From positions 434,001-498,000 of the forward strand of contig OW569361.1 in assembly GCA_937625935.1 (NCBI GenBank): a stretch of 64,000 bases of DNA, given 5' to 3'. The stretch comes from Tetramitus jugosus. Its lineage: Eukaryota; Protista; Heterolobosea. Every line of letters starts with the position of its first letter. Position 1 is the first letter of the stretch. A program made the position numbers and the translations under genes. The notes under the pieces were generated by a model, which made no database searches, was not told the DNA's origin, and saw only the letters and a program-made list of their open reading frames with translations. Below, piece by piece: positions 6,601 through 59,930 of this stretch.

Positions 6601-8381
6601 CTCTAGATGATGAGTCACTTCGGGAGTGTACACCAGTTACATCTTTCTACGTGTCTACCTTGCTCAACTCGTCTGTTACTCAATCGAAGGGATCTATTCT
6701 CACATTTTATGAATGGCTTCTGCATGTGAGACGGCCTGATGCAACACAAAACTCTGAACCTGTATTTATAACTGATATCAAGGCATGTATTATAGAGAAC
6801 CCACTGTTGCTGGTGAATATTTTACCCATTCTGTCTCGGGAGATGTCACAACATATTAGACGATCAAGGCTGCAGTTGTATAGATTATTGGTGAAGAATA
6901 TGTATCCTTCGTATATGCAGAATATGCTTTCTCATTTCAGGAATGGAAGAATTCAGATATTGTTCTCGAAGCAAAAACCTAAAAAACAAACAGGGACCAC
7001 TCCAGCCAACTCAACTAATTCTACTGCTTCTCCAACGTCAAACAAATTACCAAGCGTGGCTGATGCTGTAGCACTGATGGAAAAGAGTCTTCAATGGGAA
7101 GATCACTACGAACAAGACATCTTCTGGGATATACTTCACACAGAGATTTTCTATCAACAAAAGCAACAAATGCAGTTCGCATTCACTGGAGAACTCGATG
7201 TAGAGAATAAGAACACTGACAACAAAAACGAGAAGCAGAACGAAGGAAAAGTTCCATTTCAGATATTCAGCATGTCTGATTATATTGTCGGGCTCTTCTC
7301 AATTCCTGGTTTCGATGTCGGTGGTCGAAATGCACTCGATAAGGTGCAGAGACTTGTGGTTGGTGTTGCTAGTCTTTTCGATTATTTGCAGACAGTACAG
7401 GATGATGATCCTGTTCAATCATTCGAGATACTAAATTATGATGCGATCAAGACGATTCTTTCCTTGTCTCCTGCTCAATACTCCCAGTTTCCATCGAACC
7501 TCCTATTTGAATATGTTCAAGCTGTGGGAACATCTGTGTCAAGTATGCTCATTCATATTCTCAAGTTGATGGAGGATGATCAGCAAACACAAGTTAAAAA
7601 TCGAGATGATATATTAGTTCACTTGTTGAATGTGAAGTATTTGGAAATGAGCAGCGAGGGCATATTAGTGTTAAGACTATTTCAGACTGAGGACTTTATG
7701 AGACAACTGCATCACTTGACAGAGAAGTGGAAGAACAAGAAACAACAGTTCTTCATTCTATCTCAATTGATAGAGGGCCATACCCTGAAAGAAAAGCAAG
7801 AAAAAACTGCAAAAACAACGAGATCTCGTGTTGTCAAGTCTACCAATGCTGGTACCAGGAAATCAACCCGCAAGAGACGTCCAGCCTCCCGAAAGCTTCC
7901 TTGGGATGACGACGAAAGTTCTGGTGAGGAAGATTTTATAGTAAAGGACGAGGAAGTTGATGAGCCTGCTCAAGAGAGTAATGATGATGAGAATCAAGAA
8001 GAGGAAAACGAAGGAGAGAATGATGAGGAGGACAATAAGACCACGAAGAGAGGTACCACCACCTCTGTCAGACGCAGACGCATCAGAAGAAACATTGAGG
8101 ATGATGAAGATGAGGAAGAGAATGAGGAGTCCGATGACGATGAGAAAGAATCGAATGACAAGGAGCGCAACAATGGCAGTGATTCAGAAACGGAGAAGGA
8201 CAATAAGAAGAAAGCCCCGAAGAGACGGCGCACGAGAGACGAAGAGCAAGAGAATGAAGATGAAGAAGACGAGAATGGAGAAGGAGGAGACGAGGAGGAA
8301 GAGGAAGAGAGTGAAGAAGACCTCGAATCTAAATATCTCAAGAATCAATCCAGAAAGAGACGAAGGATCACAAAAAAATGA
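3682..8381 (+). CDS. INTS3: Integrator complex subunit 3 / SOSS-A
   Basis: Exons 3682-4077, 4215-4415, 4506-8381; both GT..AG introns keep frame. Motifs CARDG, VYTYLRLIEDQ, GRDLVR, VKMGNQRRYQLWFQ, DLIRYICCVFHPPN, ALIFDWL, MNLEPA, SLQWEDHYEQ; acidic/NLS tail. Confidence 0.93.
3703..3822 (+). repeat. CAA (poly-Gln) microsatellite tracts in the INTS3 N-terminus
   Basis: (CAA)n runs; similar CAA/TTG tracts recur in several genes of the window. Confidence 0.75.
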
Positions 8382-54237: not shown

Positions 54238-56253
54238 ATGAAAAAAATATCAAACAATTCAAAAATGATTTTCCCTCGCAAAGGATCATCTACTGTATTG
54301 CCATGCATGCTCCGAAAACTTTCCCACCAACACCATCATCATCATCACCAATGCATCAATCATTTTTTCACCCAAAGCTTTTCACATCTCACCTCTAACC
54401 ACAAAGCTAACAACAACAACAATGCTCATCAAACAAAAACTCAAATTATCACAACACCAATCTTCTACGTCAATGGACCACCACACATTGGTCACTTGTA
54501 CACTACTCTATTGGCTGATACCATGAAACATTGGTACACTATCCAATCAAAACAACAACAACAAGTTCAAAAATCAAGTTGGCTCATTACAGGCACTGAT
54601 GAACATGGTAGTAAAGTTCAAAAATCAGTCATGAGTGTTAACGCCTCAACAACAACAACCTCATCATCACTGACTTCTGCAGAAGAAATAATGTATGACT
54701 ATTGTACGAACATTAGTCTACAATTTCAAAAATTGTGTTCTGATTTTCAAATAGAGTATGATAGCTATGTGAGAACTACACATGATTTTCATAAACGAGT
54801 GGTTTGTTGTTTGTGGAATCGTCTCATGAAGAATGATGCCATCTATATGGGAGAGTACAATGGATGGTACTGCATGAGTGATGAGTGTTTTCAAACAGAT
54901 GTCATTTCAGTGGTTGATCCAGTGACTGGTGAAGAAAAAATGGTGTCAAAATTGAGTGGACACACGTGTGAATGGCTCACTGAAAAGAATTACAAGTTTC
55001 GATTGTCAAAATATAGACCATTGGTGTTGCAATGGCTCCATGACAATGCAAATCATCATTTGGTGACACCTGTGGAGAGATTTAGAGAAGTGGTGAGTGC
55101 GCTCAGTCGACACGAAGAAGATCAAGATTTGTCTGTGAGTAGAACACGTGAACGAGTGCAATGGGGCATTCCTGTGCCTGGTGATTCTTCTCAGACAATT
55201 TATGTGTGGTTGGATGCGTTGGCCAACTATATTACTGGATCGTTGAAAGAGTCGGATTTTCCAGTTCGAAAAGATGGGAGCAGAGACATTGATTTTGATG
55301 ATTTGAAGAACAAGTTGTTGGAGGGTGGAATGTGGCCACCAAGAGTGCAGATTCTGGGCAAGGACATTATCAAGTTTCATGCGTTTTATTGGCCTGCATT
55401 CTTGATGGCTCTCGATTTGCCATTGCCTCAACAATTCATTGTTCATCCCTATTGGACAGTGGATCGAGTCAAGATGAGTAAATCGTTGGGTAATGTGTTG
55501 AATCCGAGTCAATTGGTGGCTGACATTATTCAACAACAAGAGCAGCAACAGTTGCTGAGACAACAAGGAAACAAGTCTGCTAGCTCGAACAAGATCGCGA
55601 AACCTACTCTTTCAGTAGAGGATGCTCGAGACTATGTGCGATACTACTTGTTGAGAGAGGGCAATTTGAAAGATGATTCCAATTTCAGTACAGCCGAGTT
55701 CGCGGACCGTGTCAACGAATTGGCCAACGCATTTGGTAACTTGTGGAATCGAATGTTTAACAAGAGATTTGTGCCCGGCCCACGCACCATCACCTATCAT
55801 CAATCTCATGTTGGTGCAGCAGGTGAGTTGATTGAACGAATTAATAAGCTACAAACCACACTGAGAGAGTGTTATCAATCAGGTGATGTGAAACCAAGCA
55901 TCGTTCATACTTTTGTCGTCTTGCACAGATGCAATGAACTGTTTGATGAGTTGAAGCCATGGTTATGGCTGAAGGAGGCGACTAATCCTGAGCGATCAGA
56001 GAGTGAAAGGGCGGAGATTGAGAAACAAATTGAATCTCTCATGTTCGTTGTTGCAGAAACGCTTCGATGCTGTGCCATTGCGCTCTATCCTATCATGCCT
56101 CGCCGAATGTCCAAACTCCTGCAATACTTTAACGTCGAGCGAGTAGACATTGCTGATCTACAGTTTGCTGTGAGAGGAGAACAACTTCATTTGAAGGGGC
56201 ATGCATCTGATATTCTTTTCCCAAAGTTATTTGGATCTATCAACAACAAGTAA
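54238..56253 (+). CDS. MARS2: Mitochondrial methionyl-tRNA synthetase
   Basis: ITTPIFYVNGPPHIGH, TGTDEHGSK, WGIPVP..TIYVWLDALANY, GKDIIKFHAFYWPAFL, KMSKSLGN; presequence-like N-terminus. Confidence 0.93.
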   Translation: MKKISNNSKMIFPRKGSSTVLPCMLRKLSHQHHHHHHQCINHFFTQSFSHLTSNHKANNNNNAHQTKTQIITTPIFYVNGPPHIGHLYTTLLADTMKHWYTIQSKQQQQVQKSSWLITGTDEHGSKVQKSVMSVNASTTTTSSSLTSAEEIMYDYCTNISLQFQKLCSDFQIEYDSYVRTTHDFHKRVVCCLWNRLMKNDAIYMGEYNGWYCMSDECFQTDVISVVDPVTGEEKMVSKLSGHTCEWLTEKNYKFRLSKYRPLVLQWLHDNANHHLVTPVERFREVVSALSRHEEDQDLSVSRTRERVQWGIPVPGDSSQTIYVWLDALANYITGSLKESDFPVRKDGSRDIDFDDLKNKLLEGGMWPPRVQILGKDIIKFHAFYWPAFLMALDLPLPQQFIVHPYWTVDRVKMSKSLGNVLNPSQLVADIIQQQEQQQLLRQQGNKSASSNKIAKPTLSVEDARDYVRYYLLREGNLKDDSNFSTAEFADRVNELANAFGNLWNRMFNKRFVPGPRTITYHQSHVGAAGELIERINKLQTTLRECYQSGDVKPSIVHTFVVLHRCNELFDELKPWLWLKEATNPERSESERAEIEKQIESLMFVVAETLRCCAIALYPIMPRRMSKLLQYFNVERVDIADLQFAVRGEQLHLKGHASDILFPKLFGSINNK

Positions 56254-56469: not shown

Positions 56470-58545
56470 TTATGCAGCTGAGTGTAACTCTGTGTTCAGC
56501 TGATCTGCCACTTCCTCTTTCATAAAACCATACTGTGGATGCTTCTTGAACCTCATCAACGTATCCAACAGGCATGTCTTGCACTCGGACAGCAAACTAT
56601 TGAAGAATGACTGTTCTTTCTGCACCAAACGCTCATACTGATCCGGATCTTCCTTGCATTTCAGAAGCAATTGACGATCTCTCAGTAAATCTGACTTGTA
56701 CAAGCTTTCAATGTCGTGTCTCGCGTTCGATGCCAAATTCAACTCAAACTGACTCCCGTTCGCCACAAATGTCTCCATGACAAAATCCTTCTTGGCCAGT
56801 AGAACATCTAGATTCTTCTCAGTCTTGTATTGCGTCGTGATATAAATGTAGAACTTGCAGCTCTCTTCAGCTCTCTCAGAGTACGAATACAGGATAAAGT
56901 GCTTGAATGGGAGTGGCAGTGATAGGACATCGTCCAAATCTACACCGTCCTTGTCTAATACGATGCGATGCAACGTTTTTTGTTCAGGTGTCATGCGATT
57001 CCGCAAACTATCATCCACAACGAGCTTTGTCGTTGTATTGGAGGTCATGCCTCCAACGCGAGACATTTGATTCATGTTCAACAATGAACAATGAGTGATA
57101 CATTCGGACAAGTAGTCCATGGCTTCCGTTTGGTGCGACGTAGTCGCAATCATTTTCATATTTTGTGCTTCCATTTTGGCAATCTTGTGCATCAAGTGTT
57201 CTGTTTTGGTCTTGAATGGATCCAAAAAGGAGCTCGTGATATCGGAGAGCACACACTCTAGCTTTTGCAAGTTTGATTGCAAGTTGTTCAGTGAGCTCTG
57301 GTGCTCCGACTCATCTTCACCACTAGTCGTAGACCATTTGCTTGGAGAGGCATCAGAGTGCAGTGAAGCAACGTCATGTTCACTGGCCGTATCCATACTG
57401 TCAACATCGCTCGTTGCACTAGACAAGAACGAGTTTTGATGTTGAGGGTAGCTACCGCCGTGTGGGGAGATTGCGGATGGATTGTGAGGTGCCTCTAGTT
57501 GAGTCTTGACTGATTTCATGACAGCCAAGAACCGATTCTTGTCCGAGTTGGTGCTTCCGGGTATCTCACCCAGTGAGAGCACGACGTATTGAGTCTTGCC
57601 ACCGCGGACAATAATAGGAAGCGTCCGAGGGAGACCAATAAGCTTCTTCTCACCAGATTTTCGGAAACGGTCCATGTATGCATCGTGCTTTTCAGCAATG
57701 TACGAAGGTATGAGATCCTTGACGTTCATTCGCAGCATTTCACCGTGCATGTAACCAAAGAGTTGAGTCAATGAAGAGTTGACACATTGTATATCACCAA
57801 ATGCATCTGTAATCACAGCTGCATCAATCATTGCCTCTACAGCGGAGTGAATATTGAGCGAACCGCCATTCACGTTTCGGTCGACATCAGAGCTGCTGTC
57901 ACCTTCCATTAGTCCGCAATTGGCTTGATTCCTAGAGATGGTCCCAGAAAGCACCCGTATCCAATCTTCCTGCGTTTCCGAGTCATTTGCTCTGAGCACC
58001 AACGGAGCTCTCTTGTCAAAGAAGAGACCAATCGTGCATTTTTTTCCGGTAATGGGCTCCCCATCCACTGCCTTTACAATAATTGCGCGCTCTTGTCGGT
58101 TCGGAGAGGTTTGTTCCGATGCCGCGGCGCCCACCCAAAATTTTTCCGTGACCTGGTAATGCTTCTGTTGACTTTTGAGCGGGTTTTCAAGTTGGCTTGC
58201 TGTAGCTCTTGTTGCCGTTGATGTAATCTGAGGAGAGCTTGACGAGGCAATACCACCACGATGCACGGGTGATAATGATGATCCGAGAGGTGATGAAACA
58301 GGTGAAACAGGAGATGAAGAGACTTGAGTAGGTGGTTTCACTCTCATCAAGCATGAGCCATCCATGACAAAATATCCAACTTTCCACGAAGAAAACACGA
58401 GTCTTTGTTTCACTTGGAGAGAACCTTCCTTGACGACCATGTCTTCATGGATGGAAAGAGAATCTTCAGTTTCGATTCTACGTGACATGCTGCCGCCGCT
58501 CTTGTGATGATGATGACTGGTGGAGAATGGTGATGATGAGCTCAT
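56470..58545 (-). CDS. PH + FixL-type PAS + coiled coil + RGS domain signalling protein
   Basis: PH: VVKEGSLQVK..SWKVGYFV..LRANDSETQEDWIRVL. PAS: DAAVITDAFGDI..LFGY..NVKDLIP..KHDAYMDRFR..LIGLPR. RGS: LDDVL..HFILYSYSERAEESCKFY..FVANGSQFELNL..LLDTLMRFK. Confidence 0.88.
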   Translation of the reverse strand: MSSSSPFSTSHHHHKSGGSMSRRIETEDSLSIHEDMVVKEGSLQVKQRLVFSSWKVGYFVMDGSCLMRVKPPTQVSSSPVSPVSSPLGSSLSPVHRGGIASSSSPQITSTATRATASQLENPLKSQQKHYQVTEKFWVGAAASEQTSPNRQERAIIVKAVDGEPITGKKCTIGLFFDKRAPLVLRANDSETQEDWIRVLSGTISRNQANCGLMEGDSSSDVDRNVNGGSLNIHSAVEAMIDAAVITDAFGDIQCVNSSLTQLFGYMHGEMLRMNVKDLIPSYIAEKHDAYMDRFRKSGEKKLIGLPRTLPIIVRGGKTQYVVLSLGEIPGSTNSDKNRFLAVMKSVKTQLEAPHNPSAISPHGGSYPQHQNSFLSSATSDVDSMDTASEHDVASLHSDASPSKWSTTSGEDESEHQSSLNNLQSNLQKLECVLSDITSSFLDPFKTKTEHLMHKIAKMEAQNMKMIATTSHQTEAMDYLSECITHCSLLNMNQMSRVGGMTSNTTTKLVVDDSLRNRMTPEQKTLHRIVLDKDGVDLDDVLSLPLPFKHFILYSYSERAEESCKFYIYITTQYKTEKNLDVLLAKKDFVMETFVANGSQFELNLASNARHDIESLYKSDLLRDRQLLLKCKEDPDQYERLVQKEQSFFNSLLSECKTCLLDTLMRFKKHPQYGFMKEEVADQLNTELHSAA

Positions 58546-58771: not shown

Positions 58772-59085
58772 GATGGGATTCCAGAGGAGGAATATTTTTT
58801 GGGCTGCACGTTCAAGTTTTACGTGAATCATGAATTCGGTGAAGAGAAACGTGATTGCCTAAGACGGGACGAGTGACCCCAGAAGAGTTCGCTAATCACA
58901 TTGTTCGGGGCGAACATGTCATTGCTGATCGGAGCTGGATTGATCCAATCGGATTTGCCTTCAAAAGTGATACAGTTCCGATCAACAAAAACAGTTTTGG
59001 AGTTGCAACTCTTTTCTTTAACGTTCATATTCCAAATTGAGGAACCCTGTAGAATACGCATTAAGGAGGACGAGAATTACCTGGG
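58772..59085 (+). pseudogene. Frameshifted coding-like segment upstream of the CYTH ORF (possibly a first, decayed CYTH repeat)
   Basis: Short frames IPEEEYFLGCTFKFY, FAFKSDTVPINKNSFGVATL and LRNPVEYALRR, in three different frames. Confidence 0.35.
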
Positions 59086-59168
59086 TTGGTAGGTGTCTTC
59101 TACAATTTAACGTTTCAAGAAATATTGTTGTAGTGGTTGATTTCTCAAAATCAAGTTGCAACAAATTC

Positions 59169-59930
59169 ATGAAGACCACTCGACACCACGTAGCAATGGG
59201 GCTTCCTGTGGGACAACCAACAAAGAATTTTCAACACAATTCGCCGAATGAATTACGATATCGAATCGGTCTCCATGATAGTGGGATTGAGATGCTGTGC
59301 CAATCTCCTCTGATCTCTCGCCAGGAGCGTTCAAAACACAAGGAACAATATTGGAACACTGATGACAGTTCGTTGGTAATGTCTAACAAATGGTGCAAGT
59401 TAATTGTTGATAGAAACGATAGAACTGAGGTCAGGTACAAGGAAGTGACGAACTGCCCACAAACTATTGAATACAACTTGACCGTCGCTTCTCACTTCTC
59501 AGATGTTGAGGAGTTGATAGATTTACGATTGAAACCTTTAACGATTATGGACGTGGAAAGCGTTATCCTCGATTCACAGTTGGGCTTTTCTGTGCGCATT
59601 GACTATGCAACATTTGAAGATGGAGATCCGCATTGCATTTGTAGCTTGGAGGGTATTGAGAATATACCAAGTGATCTGTATCAAGAGTTGCAAGCTCATT
59701 GCATTTCCCCAATAAGAAATAAGATTTGTGAGTACCTTTTTCGTTACAAGCCAGAATTGTACCAAATCTTGGTAGATAGACAGTATGTGGAAGAGATCTA
59801 TGAGACCAGTGTTTTAGATTCTCAGTGGAACGACCTCCAATCCCACCCAGAGCTTGATTTAATTATTGCGAGGATAGAAGGAAGAAATCCTGAAGGAATT
59901 GACCCGTGGGAGGAACATTTTGAGCTCTAA
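59169..59930 (+). CDS. Degenerate CYTH (thiamine-triphosphatase-like) domain protein
   Basis: EQYWNTDDSSLVMSNKWCK vs THTPA DTYYDTPELSLMQADHWLR; FSVRIDYATF; SPIRNKICEYLFRYKPELYQIL vs PAKLIVYLQRFRPQDYQRL. Confidence 0.65.
   Translation: MKTTRHHVAMGLPVGQPTKNFQHNSPNELRYRIGLHDSGIEMLCQSPLISRQERSKHKEQYWNTDDSSLVMSNKWCKLIVDRNDRTEVRYKEVTNCPQTIEYNLTVASHFSDVEELIDLRLKPLTIMDVESVILDSQLGFSVRIDYATFEDGDPHCICSLEGIENIPSDLYQELQAHCISPIRNKICEYLFRYKPELYQILVDRQYVEEIYETSVLDSQWNDLQSHPELDLIIARIEGRNPEGIDPWEEHFEL

What the first reader, a model, noticed from the sequence alone, without database searches (positions are those of the whole stretch)
56470..58545. PH - FixL-type heme-PAS - RGS: candidate oxygen/gas-gated regulator of G-protein signalling
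Seen: the PAS segment KHDAYMDRFRKSGEKKLIGLPR..VVLSLGE aligns without gaps to rhizobial FixL RHDSYISRYRTTSDPHIIGIGR..MHLSIGE. It keeps the proximal heme His (codon 57685-57687), the Arg at +6 and the distal O2-stabilising Arg at +20. It sits between a PH domain and a coiled coil plus an RGS domain retaining E..EE...F and ELNL. Established: FixL PAS binds heme and senses O2; RGS domains are G-alpha GAPs; PH domains often bind phosphoinositides or G-beta-gamma. Inference: a one-component, receptor-independent link from O2/NO/CO to heterotrimeric G proteins, e.g. for aerotaxis or encystment.
Basis: partly seen in the sequence, partly recalled or inferred. Interest (0 to 1): 0.8.

Follow-up and report, generated by a model that had tools for sequence, protein, structure and literature searches.

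The report
Heme-PAS gas sensor fused to RGS
A soil amoeba gene joins a bacterial-style heme oxygen-sensing module to a domain that switches G proteins off, so oxygen or another gas could control G-protein signalling without a surface receptor; this is untested at the bench and I found no paper describing it.

Summary
Window 56470-58545 (minus) is one intact 691-aa ORF with four parts: a PH domain split by a serine-rich insert, a FixL-type PAS domain, a coiled coil, and a divergent RGS domain.

- **PAS:** the PAS profile hits FixL heme domains at E 2.8e-27, then DosP. The first PAS not known to bind heme appears only at 4.6e-4. The AF2 model overlays FixL at 1.6-2.0 Å. The proximal His287 and the Arg at +20 (R307) are invariant in 17 homologous PAS domains. 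The Arg at +6 is not conserved.
- **RGS:** all 50 best fold matches are RGS domains. The Gα-contact residues are kept: E557, N603 (RGS4 N128), D661, T662 and R665. A predicted complex with a Gα of the same genome scored 0.75, against 0.00 for the best control.
- **Family:** the genome, probably Tetramitus jugosus, has five such genes and two FixL-type PAS-cyclases. Members in Naegleria gruberi and N. lovaniensis are unnamed database entries. I found no paper on this architecture.
- **Closest analogues:** fungal RGS-LOV photoreceptors and 7TM-RGS receptor-GAPs.
- **Earlier scan notes:** first readers flagged three paralogues elsewhere in this genome; none was followed up.
- **Not shown:** heme binding, gas gating and GAP activity. 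An 75-residue low-complexity linker argues against FixL-style helical signal transmission.

The parts
56470..58545 (-). Whole gene: 691-aa intronless ORF (stop codon included). A second in-frame ATG at residue 20 is an alternative start.
   Evidence: co-linear with homologues P0001-P0004 over 94-96% of its length
57931..58458 (-). PH domain (residues 30-205), split by a Ser/Pro-rich insert (about residues 72-135, 58141-58332) in the beta3-beta4 region. The C-terminal helix Trp195 is invariant.
   Evidence: Pfam PH 1e-4 in the window copy, 2e-7 in paralogue L003, 1.8e-14 in P0134. PH profile A7 against PDB returns PH-domain proteins among the rows shown (PLEKHM2 9.7e-7, myosin X 3.5e-6).
57511..57864 (-). 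FixL-type (heme) PAS domain, residues 228-345
   Evidence: phmmer FixL 2.5e-11; profile FixL 2.8e-27; AF2 pLDDT 88.8; Foldseek 1d06 E 7e-12, TM 0.85, rmsd 2.0
57685..57687 (-). His287, candidate proximal heme ligand on the F-alpha helix (= BjFixL H200)
   Evidence: aligned; invariant in 17 of 17 PAS domains; lies in the helix spanning residues 57-73 of the model
57625..57627 (-). Arg307 at His+20, first residue of the G-beta strand (= BjFixL R220, EcDosP R97), the O2-stabilising arginine
   Evidence: invariant; strand starts at model residue 83
57286..57510 (-). Low-complexity Ser-rich linker, residues 346-420, variable in length among homologues
   Evidence: 19 Ser in the 85-residue stretch 346-430 that was counted
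57076..57285 (-). Coiled-coil region, residues 421-490. Heptad a/d positions are I455, M458, N462, M465, T469, Q472, M476, L479 and I483. Of these, I455, N462, T469, Q472, L479 and I483 are invariant among the five proteins of alignment A1; only Q472 stays invariant across all nine of A2.
   Evidence: invariant columns (A1; A2); profile matches to coiled-coil proteins; heptad reading is my own inspection
56476..56937 (-). Divergent RGS domain, residues 537-690, with about 23 extra residues that lengthen the alpha6/alpha7 helices
   Evidence: profile A5 against RGS4 1.5e-5 plus 21 other RGS chains; AF2 pLDDT 88.2; all 50 best Foldseek hits are RGS domains, RGS16 TMt 0.78, rmsd 3.0
56737..56739 (-). 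Asn603 (= RGS4 Asn128), the residue that contacts Gα switch I/II in RGS4-type GAPs
   Evidence: alignment to 1agr RGS4. In the predicted complex it touches Gα T356, G357, Q378, N380 and E381.
56551..56565 (-). D661-T662-L-M-R665 (= RGS4 D163-S164-Y-R-R167), Gα-contact segment of helix alpha7/8
   Evidence: invariant among the five proteins of A1; in the predicted interface

Best explanation
The gene encodes a soluble one-component sensor of a heterolobosean amoeba, probably Tetramitus jugosus.

- **Input.** A FixL-type PAS domain holds heme b through His287. When O2 (or possibly NO or CO) binds, Arg307 swings onto the ligand, as in FixL.
- **Oligomer.** The protein is probably a parallel dimer held by the PAS domains and a coiled coil.
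- **Output.** The output is a C-terminal RGS domain that accelerates GTP hydrolysis on one or more of the amoeba's many Gα subunits.
- **Why this matters here.** In the related Naegleria fowleri some Gα subunits activate themselves and are controlled by GAPs. A gas-controlled GAP would therefore set G-protein activity without a GPCR.
- **Coupling.** PAS and coiled coil are separated by a flexible low-complexity linker. The most likely coupling is therefore a ligand-dependent change in domain docking, or in PH-assisted membrane recruitment, that exposes the RGS. This resembles light-driven membrane binding of fungal RGS-LOV proteins. A rigid helical relay is less likely.

Shown here: domain identities, conserved pocket and interface residues, family conservation, and the presence of Gα partners. 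Inferred: heme binding, the ligand, GAP activity, and the coupling between them.
For: - **PAS identity.** The closest solved relatives are all heme sensors. A single-sequence search gives FixL at 2.5e-11. The family profile gives FixL at 2.8e-27, DosP at 5e-16 and the FG214 heme-PAS at 2.8e-8; the first PAS not known to bind heme is at 4.6e-4. The AF2 model (pLDDT 88.8) overlays FixL heme domains at rmsd 1.6-2.0 Å with TM up to 0.85.
- **Pocket residues.** His287 and Arg307 are invariant in 17 PAS domains from Tetramitus, Naegleria and uncultured relatives. Pocket positions map conservatively by the gapless alignment: V188/V275, L191/L278, M192/I279, Y203/Y290, I215/L302, I216/I303, L236/L323 and I238/L325. 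There is no Met at His+18, so a DosP-type six-coordinate heme is not expected. Xing et al. [quoted passage not shown]
- **RGS.** The profile hits RGS4 at 1.5e-5 and 21 more RGS chains. All 5 proteins of alignment A1 match Pfam RGS, and paralogue L006 scores 5.5e-14. All 50 best fold hits are RGS domains. E557, N603, D661, T662 and R665 match RGS4 E87, N128, D163, S164 and R167.
- **Predicted complex.** With a Gα of the same genome the score was 0.75, against 0.00 for the best of 3 controls. That mark was reached by 51 of 78 solved complexes and 2 of 108 mismatched pairs. Runs agree in at least 84% of contacts and the partner pLDDT is at least 83. The interface lies on switches I-III.
- **Partners.** The genome has roughly 25-30 Gα genes (49 exon-level Pfam matches, my estimate) and at least 130 RGS matches.
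- **Family.** There are five paralogues in this genome. Two ancient subfamilies each contain a Naegleria and a Tetramitus member.
- **GAP-level control.** Self-activating Gα subunits regulated by GAPs are documented in N. fowleri (PMC9283941).
- **Precedent.** RGS-LOV proteins join a PAS-superfamily sensor to an RGS (PMC6099885).
Against: - No experiment shows heme binding, gas response or GAP activity for any family member.
- The window copy alone is below the Pfam cut-offs for RGS (15.4 against 23.9 bits) and PH (23.2 against 25.1).
- Foldseek E-values for the RGS model are only about 1e-3.
- The complex prediction may score from memory of solved RGS-Gα complexes. It does not say which Gα binds.
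- About 40% of PAS domains in the FixL/DosP cluster lack the His, so the cluster as such is not always heme-binding. This family does keep the His.
- A 75-residue serine-rich linker (346-420) lies between PAS and coiled coil. No known heme-PAS sensor signals across such a linker.
- Arg293 (+6) is not conserved.
Confidence: 0.55

Rival explanations
1. The PAS binds heme, but the protein senses NO, CO or redox state (ferric/ferrous) rather than O2. Alternatively the heme is a constitutive structural or dimerisation cofactor with no gating role.
For: Heme-PAS domains respond to different ligands: DosP also reports redox state, and FG214 is redox-regulated (its abstract; PDB 10jx). FixL itself binds CO and NO, as shown by the PDB entries listed. 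The flexible linker weakens the case for tight allosteric coupling.
Against: The invariant Arg at His+20 is the residue that makes FixL and DosP respond to O2 (established knowledge of FixL R220 and DosP R97). The Leu at +18 in place of Met argues against a DosP-like redox switch. Conservation of a full sensor pocket across two ancient subfamilies is hard to explain for a passive cofactor.
Confidence: 0.2
2. The PAS does not bind heme. It is a ligand-free or other-ligand dimerisation module, and the protein is simply a PH-targeted RGS, one of more than 100 in this genome.
For: Some eukaryotic PAS domains derived from the FixL/DosP cluster, such as human PASK PAS-A, have lost heme binding (PMC10468136). 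No experimental data exist for this family.
Against: PASK lost the His, whereas here His287 and Arg307 are invariant in 17 of 17 domains, including the cyclase-linked ones. All PDB matches below E 1e-7 are heme-PAS domains. The hydrophobic pocket residues are conservatively kept.
Confidence: 0.15
3. The RGS-like domain binds Gα but is not a GAP. It would act as an effector or scaffold interface, as RGS-homology domains do in RhoGEFs or GRK2. Information might then flow from Gα to the protein rather than the reverse.
For: The domain is divergent, with a roughly 23-residue insertion and a sub-threshold Pfam score. N. fowleri has an RGS-RhoGEF that acts as a Gα effector. Some paralogues appear to lack the Asn (L004 and L006, by my reading of alignment A3, in which L006 is poorly aligned).
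Against: This copy and the four other proteins of A1 keep the GAP-type residues N603, E557, D661, T662 and R665. The best fold matches are R4, RZ and R7 GAP-type RGS domains; the RhoGEF rgRGS appears only at rank 32 with TM 0.40. The predicted interface is the canonical switch I-III one. No effector domain such as DH or a kinase is attached.
Confidence: 0.08
4. The gene is an unexpressed or decaying paralogue of the family.
For: Expression could not be checked. There are five paralogues, so redundancy is possible.
Against: The 691-codon frame is intact. All functional residues are conserved. Close relatives at 39-45% identity are co-linear over the full length.
Confidence: 0.02

Closest known systems
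FixL (Bradyrhizobium japonicum / Sinorhizobium meliloti) heme-PAS oxygen sensor
   Same: Same PAS subfamily: profile E 2.8e-27 and model rmsd 1.6-2.0 Å. It shares the proximal His on F-alpha, the Arg at His+20 on G-beta, a hydrophobic distal pocket and no distal Met.
   Different: The output is an RGS domain, not a HisKA/HATPase kinase. The host is a eukaryote. An N-terminal PH domain is present. The PAS is not joined directly to the coiled coil but through a 75-residue low-complexity linker. Identity is only 25-29%.
E. coli DosP (EcDOS) heme-PAS phosphodiesterase and other heme-PAS one-component proteins (FG214)
   Same: A heme-PAS of the same cluster is fused directly to an enzymatic or regulatory output in one polypeptide (profile E 5e-16).
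   Different: DosP has a distal Met at His+18, giving a six-coordinate heme; here that position is Leu. DosP's output is c-di-GMP turnover, which is absent here.
Fungal RGS-LOV photoreceptors (BcLOV4, MoRgs5; PMC6099885)
   Same: Eukaryotic, soluble, single-chain fusion of an RGS domain with a PAS-superfamily sensor and a lipid-binding element. It shows that a sensor can control an RGS protein through membrane recruitment.
   Different: The sensor there is an FMN-binding LOV domain responding to blue light, not a heme-PAS. The domain order is reversed (RGS N-terminal). The lipid-binding element is a polybasic helix, not a PH domain. The families are not homologous beyond the domain level.
Seven-transmembrane RGS receptor-GAPs (Arabidopsis AtRGS1; N. 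fowleri 7TM-RGS, PMC9283941)
   Same: The logic is the same: the signal enters G-protein signalling at the GAP step, acting on self-activating Gα subunits, and no GPCR-GEF is needed.
   Different: Those are membrane receptors for extracellular cues. This protein is cytosolic and has a cofactor-based gas sensor.
Uncharacterised database entries: Naegleria gruberi XP_002678421.1 (D2VC34, 'predicted protein') and N. lovaniensis XP_044551203.1 ('PH domain-containing protein')
   Same: Members of the same PH-PAS-coiled coil-RGS family with His and Arg conserved.
   Different: They are not orthologues of the window gene (different branches or subfamily). They carry no functional annotation, and I found no publication on them.

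Membership tests
FixL/DosP-type heme-PAS (cluster 3 of Xing et al. 2023) | PAS fold with closest sequence and structure similarity to FixL/DosP heme domains | tested here: met
   Profile FixL 2.8e-27, DosP 5e-16. Foldseek 1d06 E 7e-12, TM 0.85; the top 24 hits are heme-PAS structures.
FixL/DosP-type heme-PAS (cluster 3 of Xing et al. 2023) | Proximal histidine on helix F-alpha | tested here: met
   His287 aligns to BjFixL H200 and RmFixL H194. It is invariant in 17 of 17 homologues and lies in the model helix 57-73.
FixL/DosP-type heme-PAS (cluster 3 of Xing et al. 2023) | Arg at His+20 on G-beta that stabilises bound O2 | tested here: met
   Arg307 is invariant.
FixL/DosP-type heme-PAS (cluster 3 of Xing et al. 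2023) | Arg at His+6 contacting a heme propionate (BjFixL R206) | tested here: inconclusive
   It is present in the window copy (R293) but replaced by V, H, N or K in relatives. R295 (+8) is invariant among the five proteins of A1.
FixL/DosP-type heme-PAS (cluster 3 of Xing et al. 2023) | Actual heme b binding and ligand-dependent switching | not testable with these tools
   This needs spectroscopy of the purified protein.
FixL sensor histidine kinase (two-component system) | HisKA + HATPase_c kinase output | tested here: not met
   Pfam finds no kinase domains. The protein is a relative of FixL's sensor domain only.
RGS domain (GAP-type, R4-like) | Pfam PF00615 match above the gathering score | tested here: inconclusive
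   The window copy scores 15.4 bits against a cut-off of 23.9. Family members are above it: L005 32.8, L006 53.0, P0023 32.9, P0051 34.8, P0069 29.8. The profile hits RGS4 at 1.5e-5.
RGS domain (GAP-type, R4-like) | Nine-helix RGS fold | tested here: met
   AF2 pLDDT 88.2. All 50 best Foldseek hits are RGS domains, with TMt up to 0.78 and rmsd 3.0-3.5 Å. The alpha6/alpha7 helices are elongated.
RGS domain (GAP-type, R4-like) | Gα-contact residues (RGS4 E87, N128, D163, S164, R167) | tested here: met
   E557, N603, D661, T662 and R665 are invariant among the five proteins of A1. RGS4 N88 is Ser562 here.
RGS domain (GAP-type, R4-like) | Binding to the switch regions of an activated Gα | tested here: inconclusive
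   The predicted complex scored 0.75 against 0.00 for the best control, with a canonical switch I-III interface. This supports binding but does not show it, and it may reflect memory of solved complexes.
RGS domain (GAP-type, R4-like) | GTPase-accelerating activity | not testable with these tools
   This needs single-turnover GTPase assays.
PH domain | PH fold / profile match | tested here: met
   The window copy scores 23.2 bits (cut-off 25.1). Paralogue L003 scores 31.9 and P0134 54.6. The family profile against PDB returns PH-domain proteins among the rows shown, the best at 9.7e-7. The conserved C-terminal helix Trp195 is present.
PH domain | Basic K-Xn-(K/R)-X-R phosphoinositide-binding motif in beta1-beta2 | tested here: not met
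   Strand beta2 reads W-K-V-G-Y-F, so the second basic residue is missing. High-affinity 3-phosphoinositide binding is therefore not predicted. The motif itself is recalled from established knowledge.
Fungal RGS-LOV photoreceptors | N-terminal RGS followed by an FMN-binding LOV domain with the adduct-forming Cys | tested here: not met
   The domain order is reversed and the PAS is of the heme type. LOV structures rank far below FixL. This is an analogue, not a member.

The most novel reading that the evidence does not exclude
Heterolobosean amoebae (Tetramitus, Naegleria) have an ancient family of cytosolic, heme-based gas sensors that are ligand-gated GAPs for self-activating Gα subunits. Together with FixL-type PAS-cyclases, these would form a direct O2-to-G-protein/cAMP input that needs no GPCR. 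It could drive oxygen-dependent behaviour such as aerotaxis or the amoeba-to-flagellate switch, which from memory is favoured by low oxygen in Tetramitus.
Probability: 0.35. Interest if true: 0.85.

Novelty: new variant of a known kind. Interest (0 to 1): 0.68.

Why it matters
Known direct heme-based gas sensors in eukaryotes are few: soluble guanylate cyclase, some nuclear receptors and bHLH-PAS factors, HRI, and a globin-coupled cyclase in Leishmania. I know of none that feeds into heterotrimeric G proteins, and my searches found none.

If this family binds heme and gates its RGS domain, it would show three things:
- The bacterial FixL sensor module was re-used in a eukaryote with an exclusively eukaryotic output.
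- G-protein signalling can take a dissolved gas as a direct input at the GAP step.
- Oxygen-dependent behaviour and differentiation of free-living amoebae would gain a testable molecular handle. The genus Naegleria belongs to this group.

It could also give a compact, gas-switchable module for controlling Gα signalling, as RGS-LOV did for light.

Tried and rejected
- **Word-index search.** Two searches, with the single protein and with a 9-sequence profile, returned only the same four full-length relatives because candidate lists were capped at 8000. The exhaustive profile search was needed to find the Naegleria members. Its top ranks were swamped by giant multi-PAS proteins with 13 PAS repeats, which are not family members.
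- **Literature.** Searches for heme-PAS plus RGS, Naegleria plus PAS/RGS/heme, and the assembly accession of homologue P0002 found no description of this architecture.
- **Earlier findings.** Word searches of this scan's earlier findings gave nothing. Place searches gave paralogue notes and the organism lead.
- **ESM Atlas.** The feature search scored below 0.9 for all hits. It gave only a lead: haptophyte LOV-RGS clusters.
- **DosP-type six-coordinate sensor.** Considered and rejected, because there is no Met at His+18.
- **PASK-type eukaryotic PAS.** Considered and rejected. No PASK chain appeared among PDB hits at E 1e-3, and PASK lacks the His.
- **rgRGS effector-type domain.** Considered and rejected. 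It ranks 32nd with TM 0.40.
- **Operon-like link to neighbours.** A mitochondrial MetRS and a CYTH-like gene are adjacent. This is a eukaryote and the genes are unrelated in function.
Full report
**Gene and organism**

The window is eukaryotic DNA with about 41% G+C and few introns. The feature is a single open frame on the minus strand, 56470-58545, encoding 691 residues.

The window's assembly has 26.35 Mb in 56 contigs. This matches the published genome note for the heterolobosean amoeboflagellate Tetramitus jugosus CCAP 1588/3C: 26.3 Mb and 52 chromosomes (PMC11106597). An earlier agent of this scan also named that species. I checked this only by size and contig number, so the identification is probable, not proven. 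The exact protein is not in the public protein collection.

**Observation**

- A phmmer search of the whole protein against PDB gives FixL heme domains as the best hits: 1d06 at 2.5e-11, 8js5 at 6.9e-11 and 1dp6 at 8.7e-10. The alignment over residues 227-329 has no gap. E. coli DosP/YddU heme-PAS domains follow.
- Codon 57685-57687 is His287, aligned with BjFixL His200. Arg293 is at +6 and Arg307 at +20.
- Pfam reports PAS at 4.7e-6, a partial PH at 1e-4 and RGS at 0.025.

**PAS domain**

I built a profile from eleven PAS domains of the family. It hits FixL at 2.8e-27, DosP at 5e-16 and the recently solved heme-PAS of FG214 at 2.8e-8. The next match, a sensory-box PAS not known to bind heme, is at 4.6e-4.

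An AlphaFold2 model (pLDDT 88.8) has the PAS topology, with His287 on the long F-alpha helix and Arg307 at the start of G-beta. Its best structural matches are RmFixL (E 7e-12, TM 0.85, rmsd 2.0 Å) and about twenty BjFixL entries (rmsd 1.6-2.0 Å), then FG214 and EcDOS.

In an alignment of 17 PAS domains, only four columns are invariant. The set comprises the window gene, four paralogues, eight homologues from other organisms including Naegleria gruberi and N. lovaniensis, and two cyclase-linked PAS domains from this genome. Two of the four invariant columns are His287 and Arg307.

By the gapless alignment, the FixL pocket residues are conservatively kept:

| BjFixL | Window protein |
|---|---|
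| V188 | V275 |
| L191 | L278 |
| M192 | I279 |
| Y203 | Y290 |
| I215 | L302 |
| I216 | I303 |
| L236 | L323 |
| I238 | L325 |

The FixL numbering is from established knowledge of BjFixL; the mapping is. Position +18 is Leu, not the Met that ligates the iron in DosP, so a five-coordinate FixL-like heme is expected. The +6 Arg is not conserved in the family.

Xing et al. 2023 place FixL and DosP in one PAS cluster. [quoted passage not shown] I put heme binding at about 0.8.

**RGS domain**

The window copy alone is sub-threshold, but several lines agree.
- All five proteins of alignment A1 match Pfam RGS, the best at 1.3e-5.
- Paralogue L006 scores 5.5e-14 and L005 9.8e-8.
- A profile of eight C-terminal regions hits RGS4 (1agr) at 1.5e-5 and 21 other RGS chains.
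- The AF2 model (pLDDT 88.2) is all-helical. Its 50 best Foldseek matches are all RGS domains, with RGS16 and RGS8 at TMt 0.74-0.78 and rmsd 3.0-4.3 Å. The E-values are only about 1e-3.

The domain carries about 23 extra residues that lengthen helices alpha6/alpha7. The alignment to RGS4 places E557 at E87, N603 at N128, and D661, T662 and R665 at D163, S164 and R167. These positions are invariant among the five proteins of A1.

**Partner test**

The genome has 49 exon-level Gα Pfam matches, which I estimate to be roughly 25-30 genes, and at least 130 RGS matches.

I co-folded the RGS domain with the GTPase domain of one complete Gα (L011, residues 195-528). The score was 0.75, against 0.00 for the best of three controls. 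That mark was reached by 51 of 78 solved complexes and 2 of 108 mismatched pairs. Runs agree in at least 84% of contacts and the partner pLDDT is at least 83.

The interface is the canonical one. N603 touches switch I (T356, G357) and switch II (Q378, N380, E381), and E557, D661, T662 and R665 line the pocket.

Many RGS-Gα complexes are solved, so this result shows likeness. It does not prove that this copy binds, and it does not say which Gα it would bind.

**PH domain, linker and coiled coil**

A family PH profile matches PH-domain proteins among the PDB rows shown: PLEKHM2 at 9.7e-7, myosin X at 3.5e-6, and Akt. The domain is interrupted by a Ser/Pro-rich insert, and its beta2 strand lacks the second basic residue of the phosphoinositide motif. 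Specific lipid binding is therefore not predicted.

Residues 346-420 are low-complexity and vary in length among homologues.

Residues about 421-490 show a heptad pattern. Its core positions include an Asn (N462) that is invariant among the five proteins of A1, a feature typical of parallel dimers. This is my own reading of the alignment. Profile matches to coiled-coil proteins appear.

**Family and distribution**

The genome has five PH-PAS-coiled coil-RGS genes: this one plus copies on contigs C35 and C12 and two on C46. It also has two PAS-PAS-cyclase genes whose second PAS keeps the His and Arg.

An exhaustive profile search found further members. They include N. gruberi XP_002678421.1 ('predicted protein') and N. 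lovaniensis XP_044551203.1 ('PH domain-containing protein').

A maximum-likelihood tree of 16 members splits them into two subfamilies with 100/100 support, rooted at the midpoint for drawing only. Each subfamily contains a Naegleria and a Tetramitus sequence, so the duplication probably predates the split of those genera.

One member of each subfamily lies about 8 kb apart on contig C46. One of each is also adjacent on a metagenome contig.

**Mechanism**

In N. fowleri some Gα subunits exchange nucleotide faster than they hydrolyse it, and 7TM-RGS proteins accelerate their hydrolysis (PMC9283941). In such a system the regulated step is the GAP, so a ligand-controlled RGS is a plausible primary input.

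The flexible linker makes a continuous helical relay, as in FixL, unlikely. The fungal RGS-LOV proteins offer the best precedent. There light exposes a lipid-binding helix that the RGS domain masks in the dark, and membrane arrival is thought to enable GAP action (PMC6099885).

I therefore favour ligand-dependent inter-domain docking or membrane recruitment, but this step is pure inference.

**Novelty**

I found no paper that describes a heme-PAS joined to an RGS domain. The family members in public databases are unnamed.

PAS-superfamily sensors fused to RGS are known (RGS-LOV), and heme-PAS sensors fused to kinases, phosphodiesterases and transcription factors are known. This is therefore a new variant of a known kind.

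First readers of this scan flagged three paralogues in the same genome, and none was followed up.

**Limits**

Noticed in passing
L007:790-2559 (G000:C7) and L008:694-2547 (G000:C39): Two PAS-PAS-adenylate/guanylate cyclase genes. Their second PAS is FixL-type and keeps the proximal His and the +20 Arg. They are candidate heme-gated cyclases, a second output for the same sensor module in this genome.
   Followed up: partly
G000:C46:149750-150109 (L005) and G000:C46:158132-158476 (L006); also L014:78-1805 and L014:1864-3462: One member of each of the two PH-PAS-RGS subfamilies lies about 8 kb apart on contig C46. One of each is also adjacent (convergent) on an unrelated metagenome contig. This suggests a retained ancient tandem pair.
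   Followed up: partly
whole genome G000: There is a very large G-protein toolkit for a 26-Mb genome: at least 130 Pfam RGS matches and 49 exon-level Gα matches, roughly 25-30 genes by my estimate. Several RGS matches lie in open frames longer than 2000 aa.
   Followed up: no
proteins P0013-P0050; P0052 = Bodo saltans CUG33156.1; P0083 = Odontella aurita transcript: Giant proteins (up to about 4500 aa among those listed) carry up to 13 tandem FixL-like PAS repeats. They occur in protist and unassigned metagenome data, including a Bodo saltans 'methyl-accepting chemotaxis protein, putative' and a diatom transcript. I did not check whether these repeats keep the heme His.
   Followed up: no
window 54238-56253 (+) and 59037-59930 (+): The neighbours are a methionyl-tRNA synthetase with a His/Asn-rich N-terminal extension and an ORF that earlier readers called CYTH-like. 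Neither has an evident functional link to the sensor gene.
   Followed up: no
ESM Atlas cluster, row 5: A eukaryotic (haptophyte-labelled) cluster of about 660-aa 'LOV domain-containing' proteins, in which 46% of members also carry an RGS domain. PAS/LOV-RGS fusions therefore seem to have arisen repeatedly outside fungi.
   Followed up: no
Expression and read-level checks were therefore impossible.
   Followed up: no
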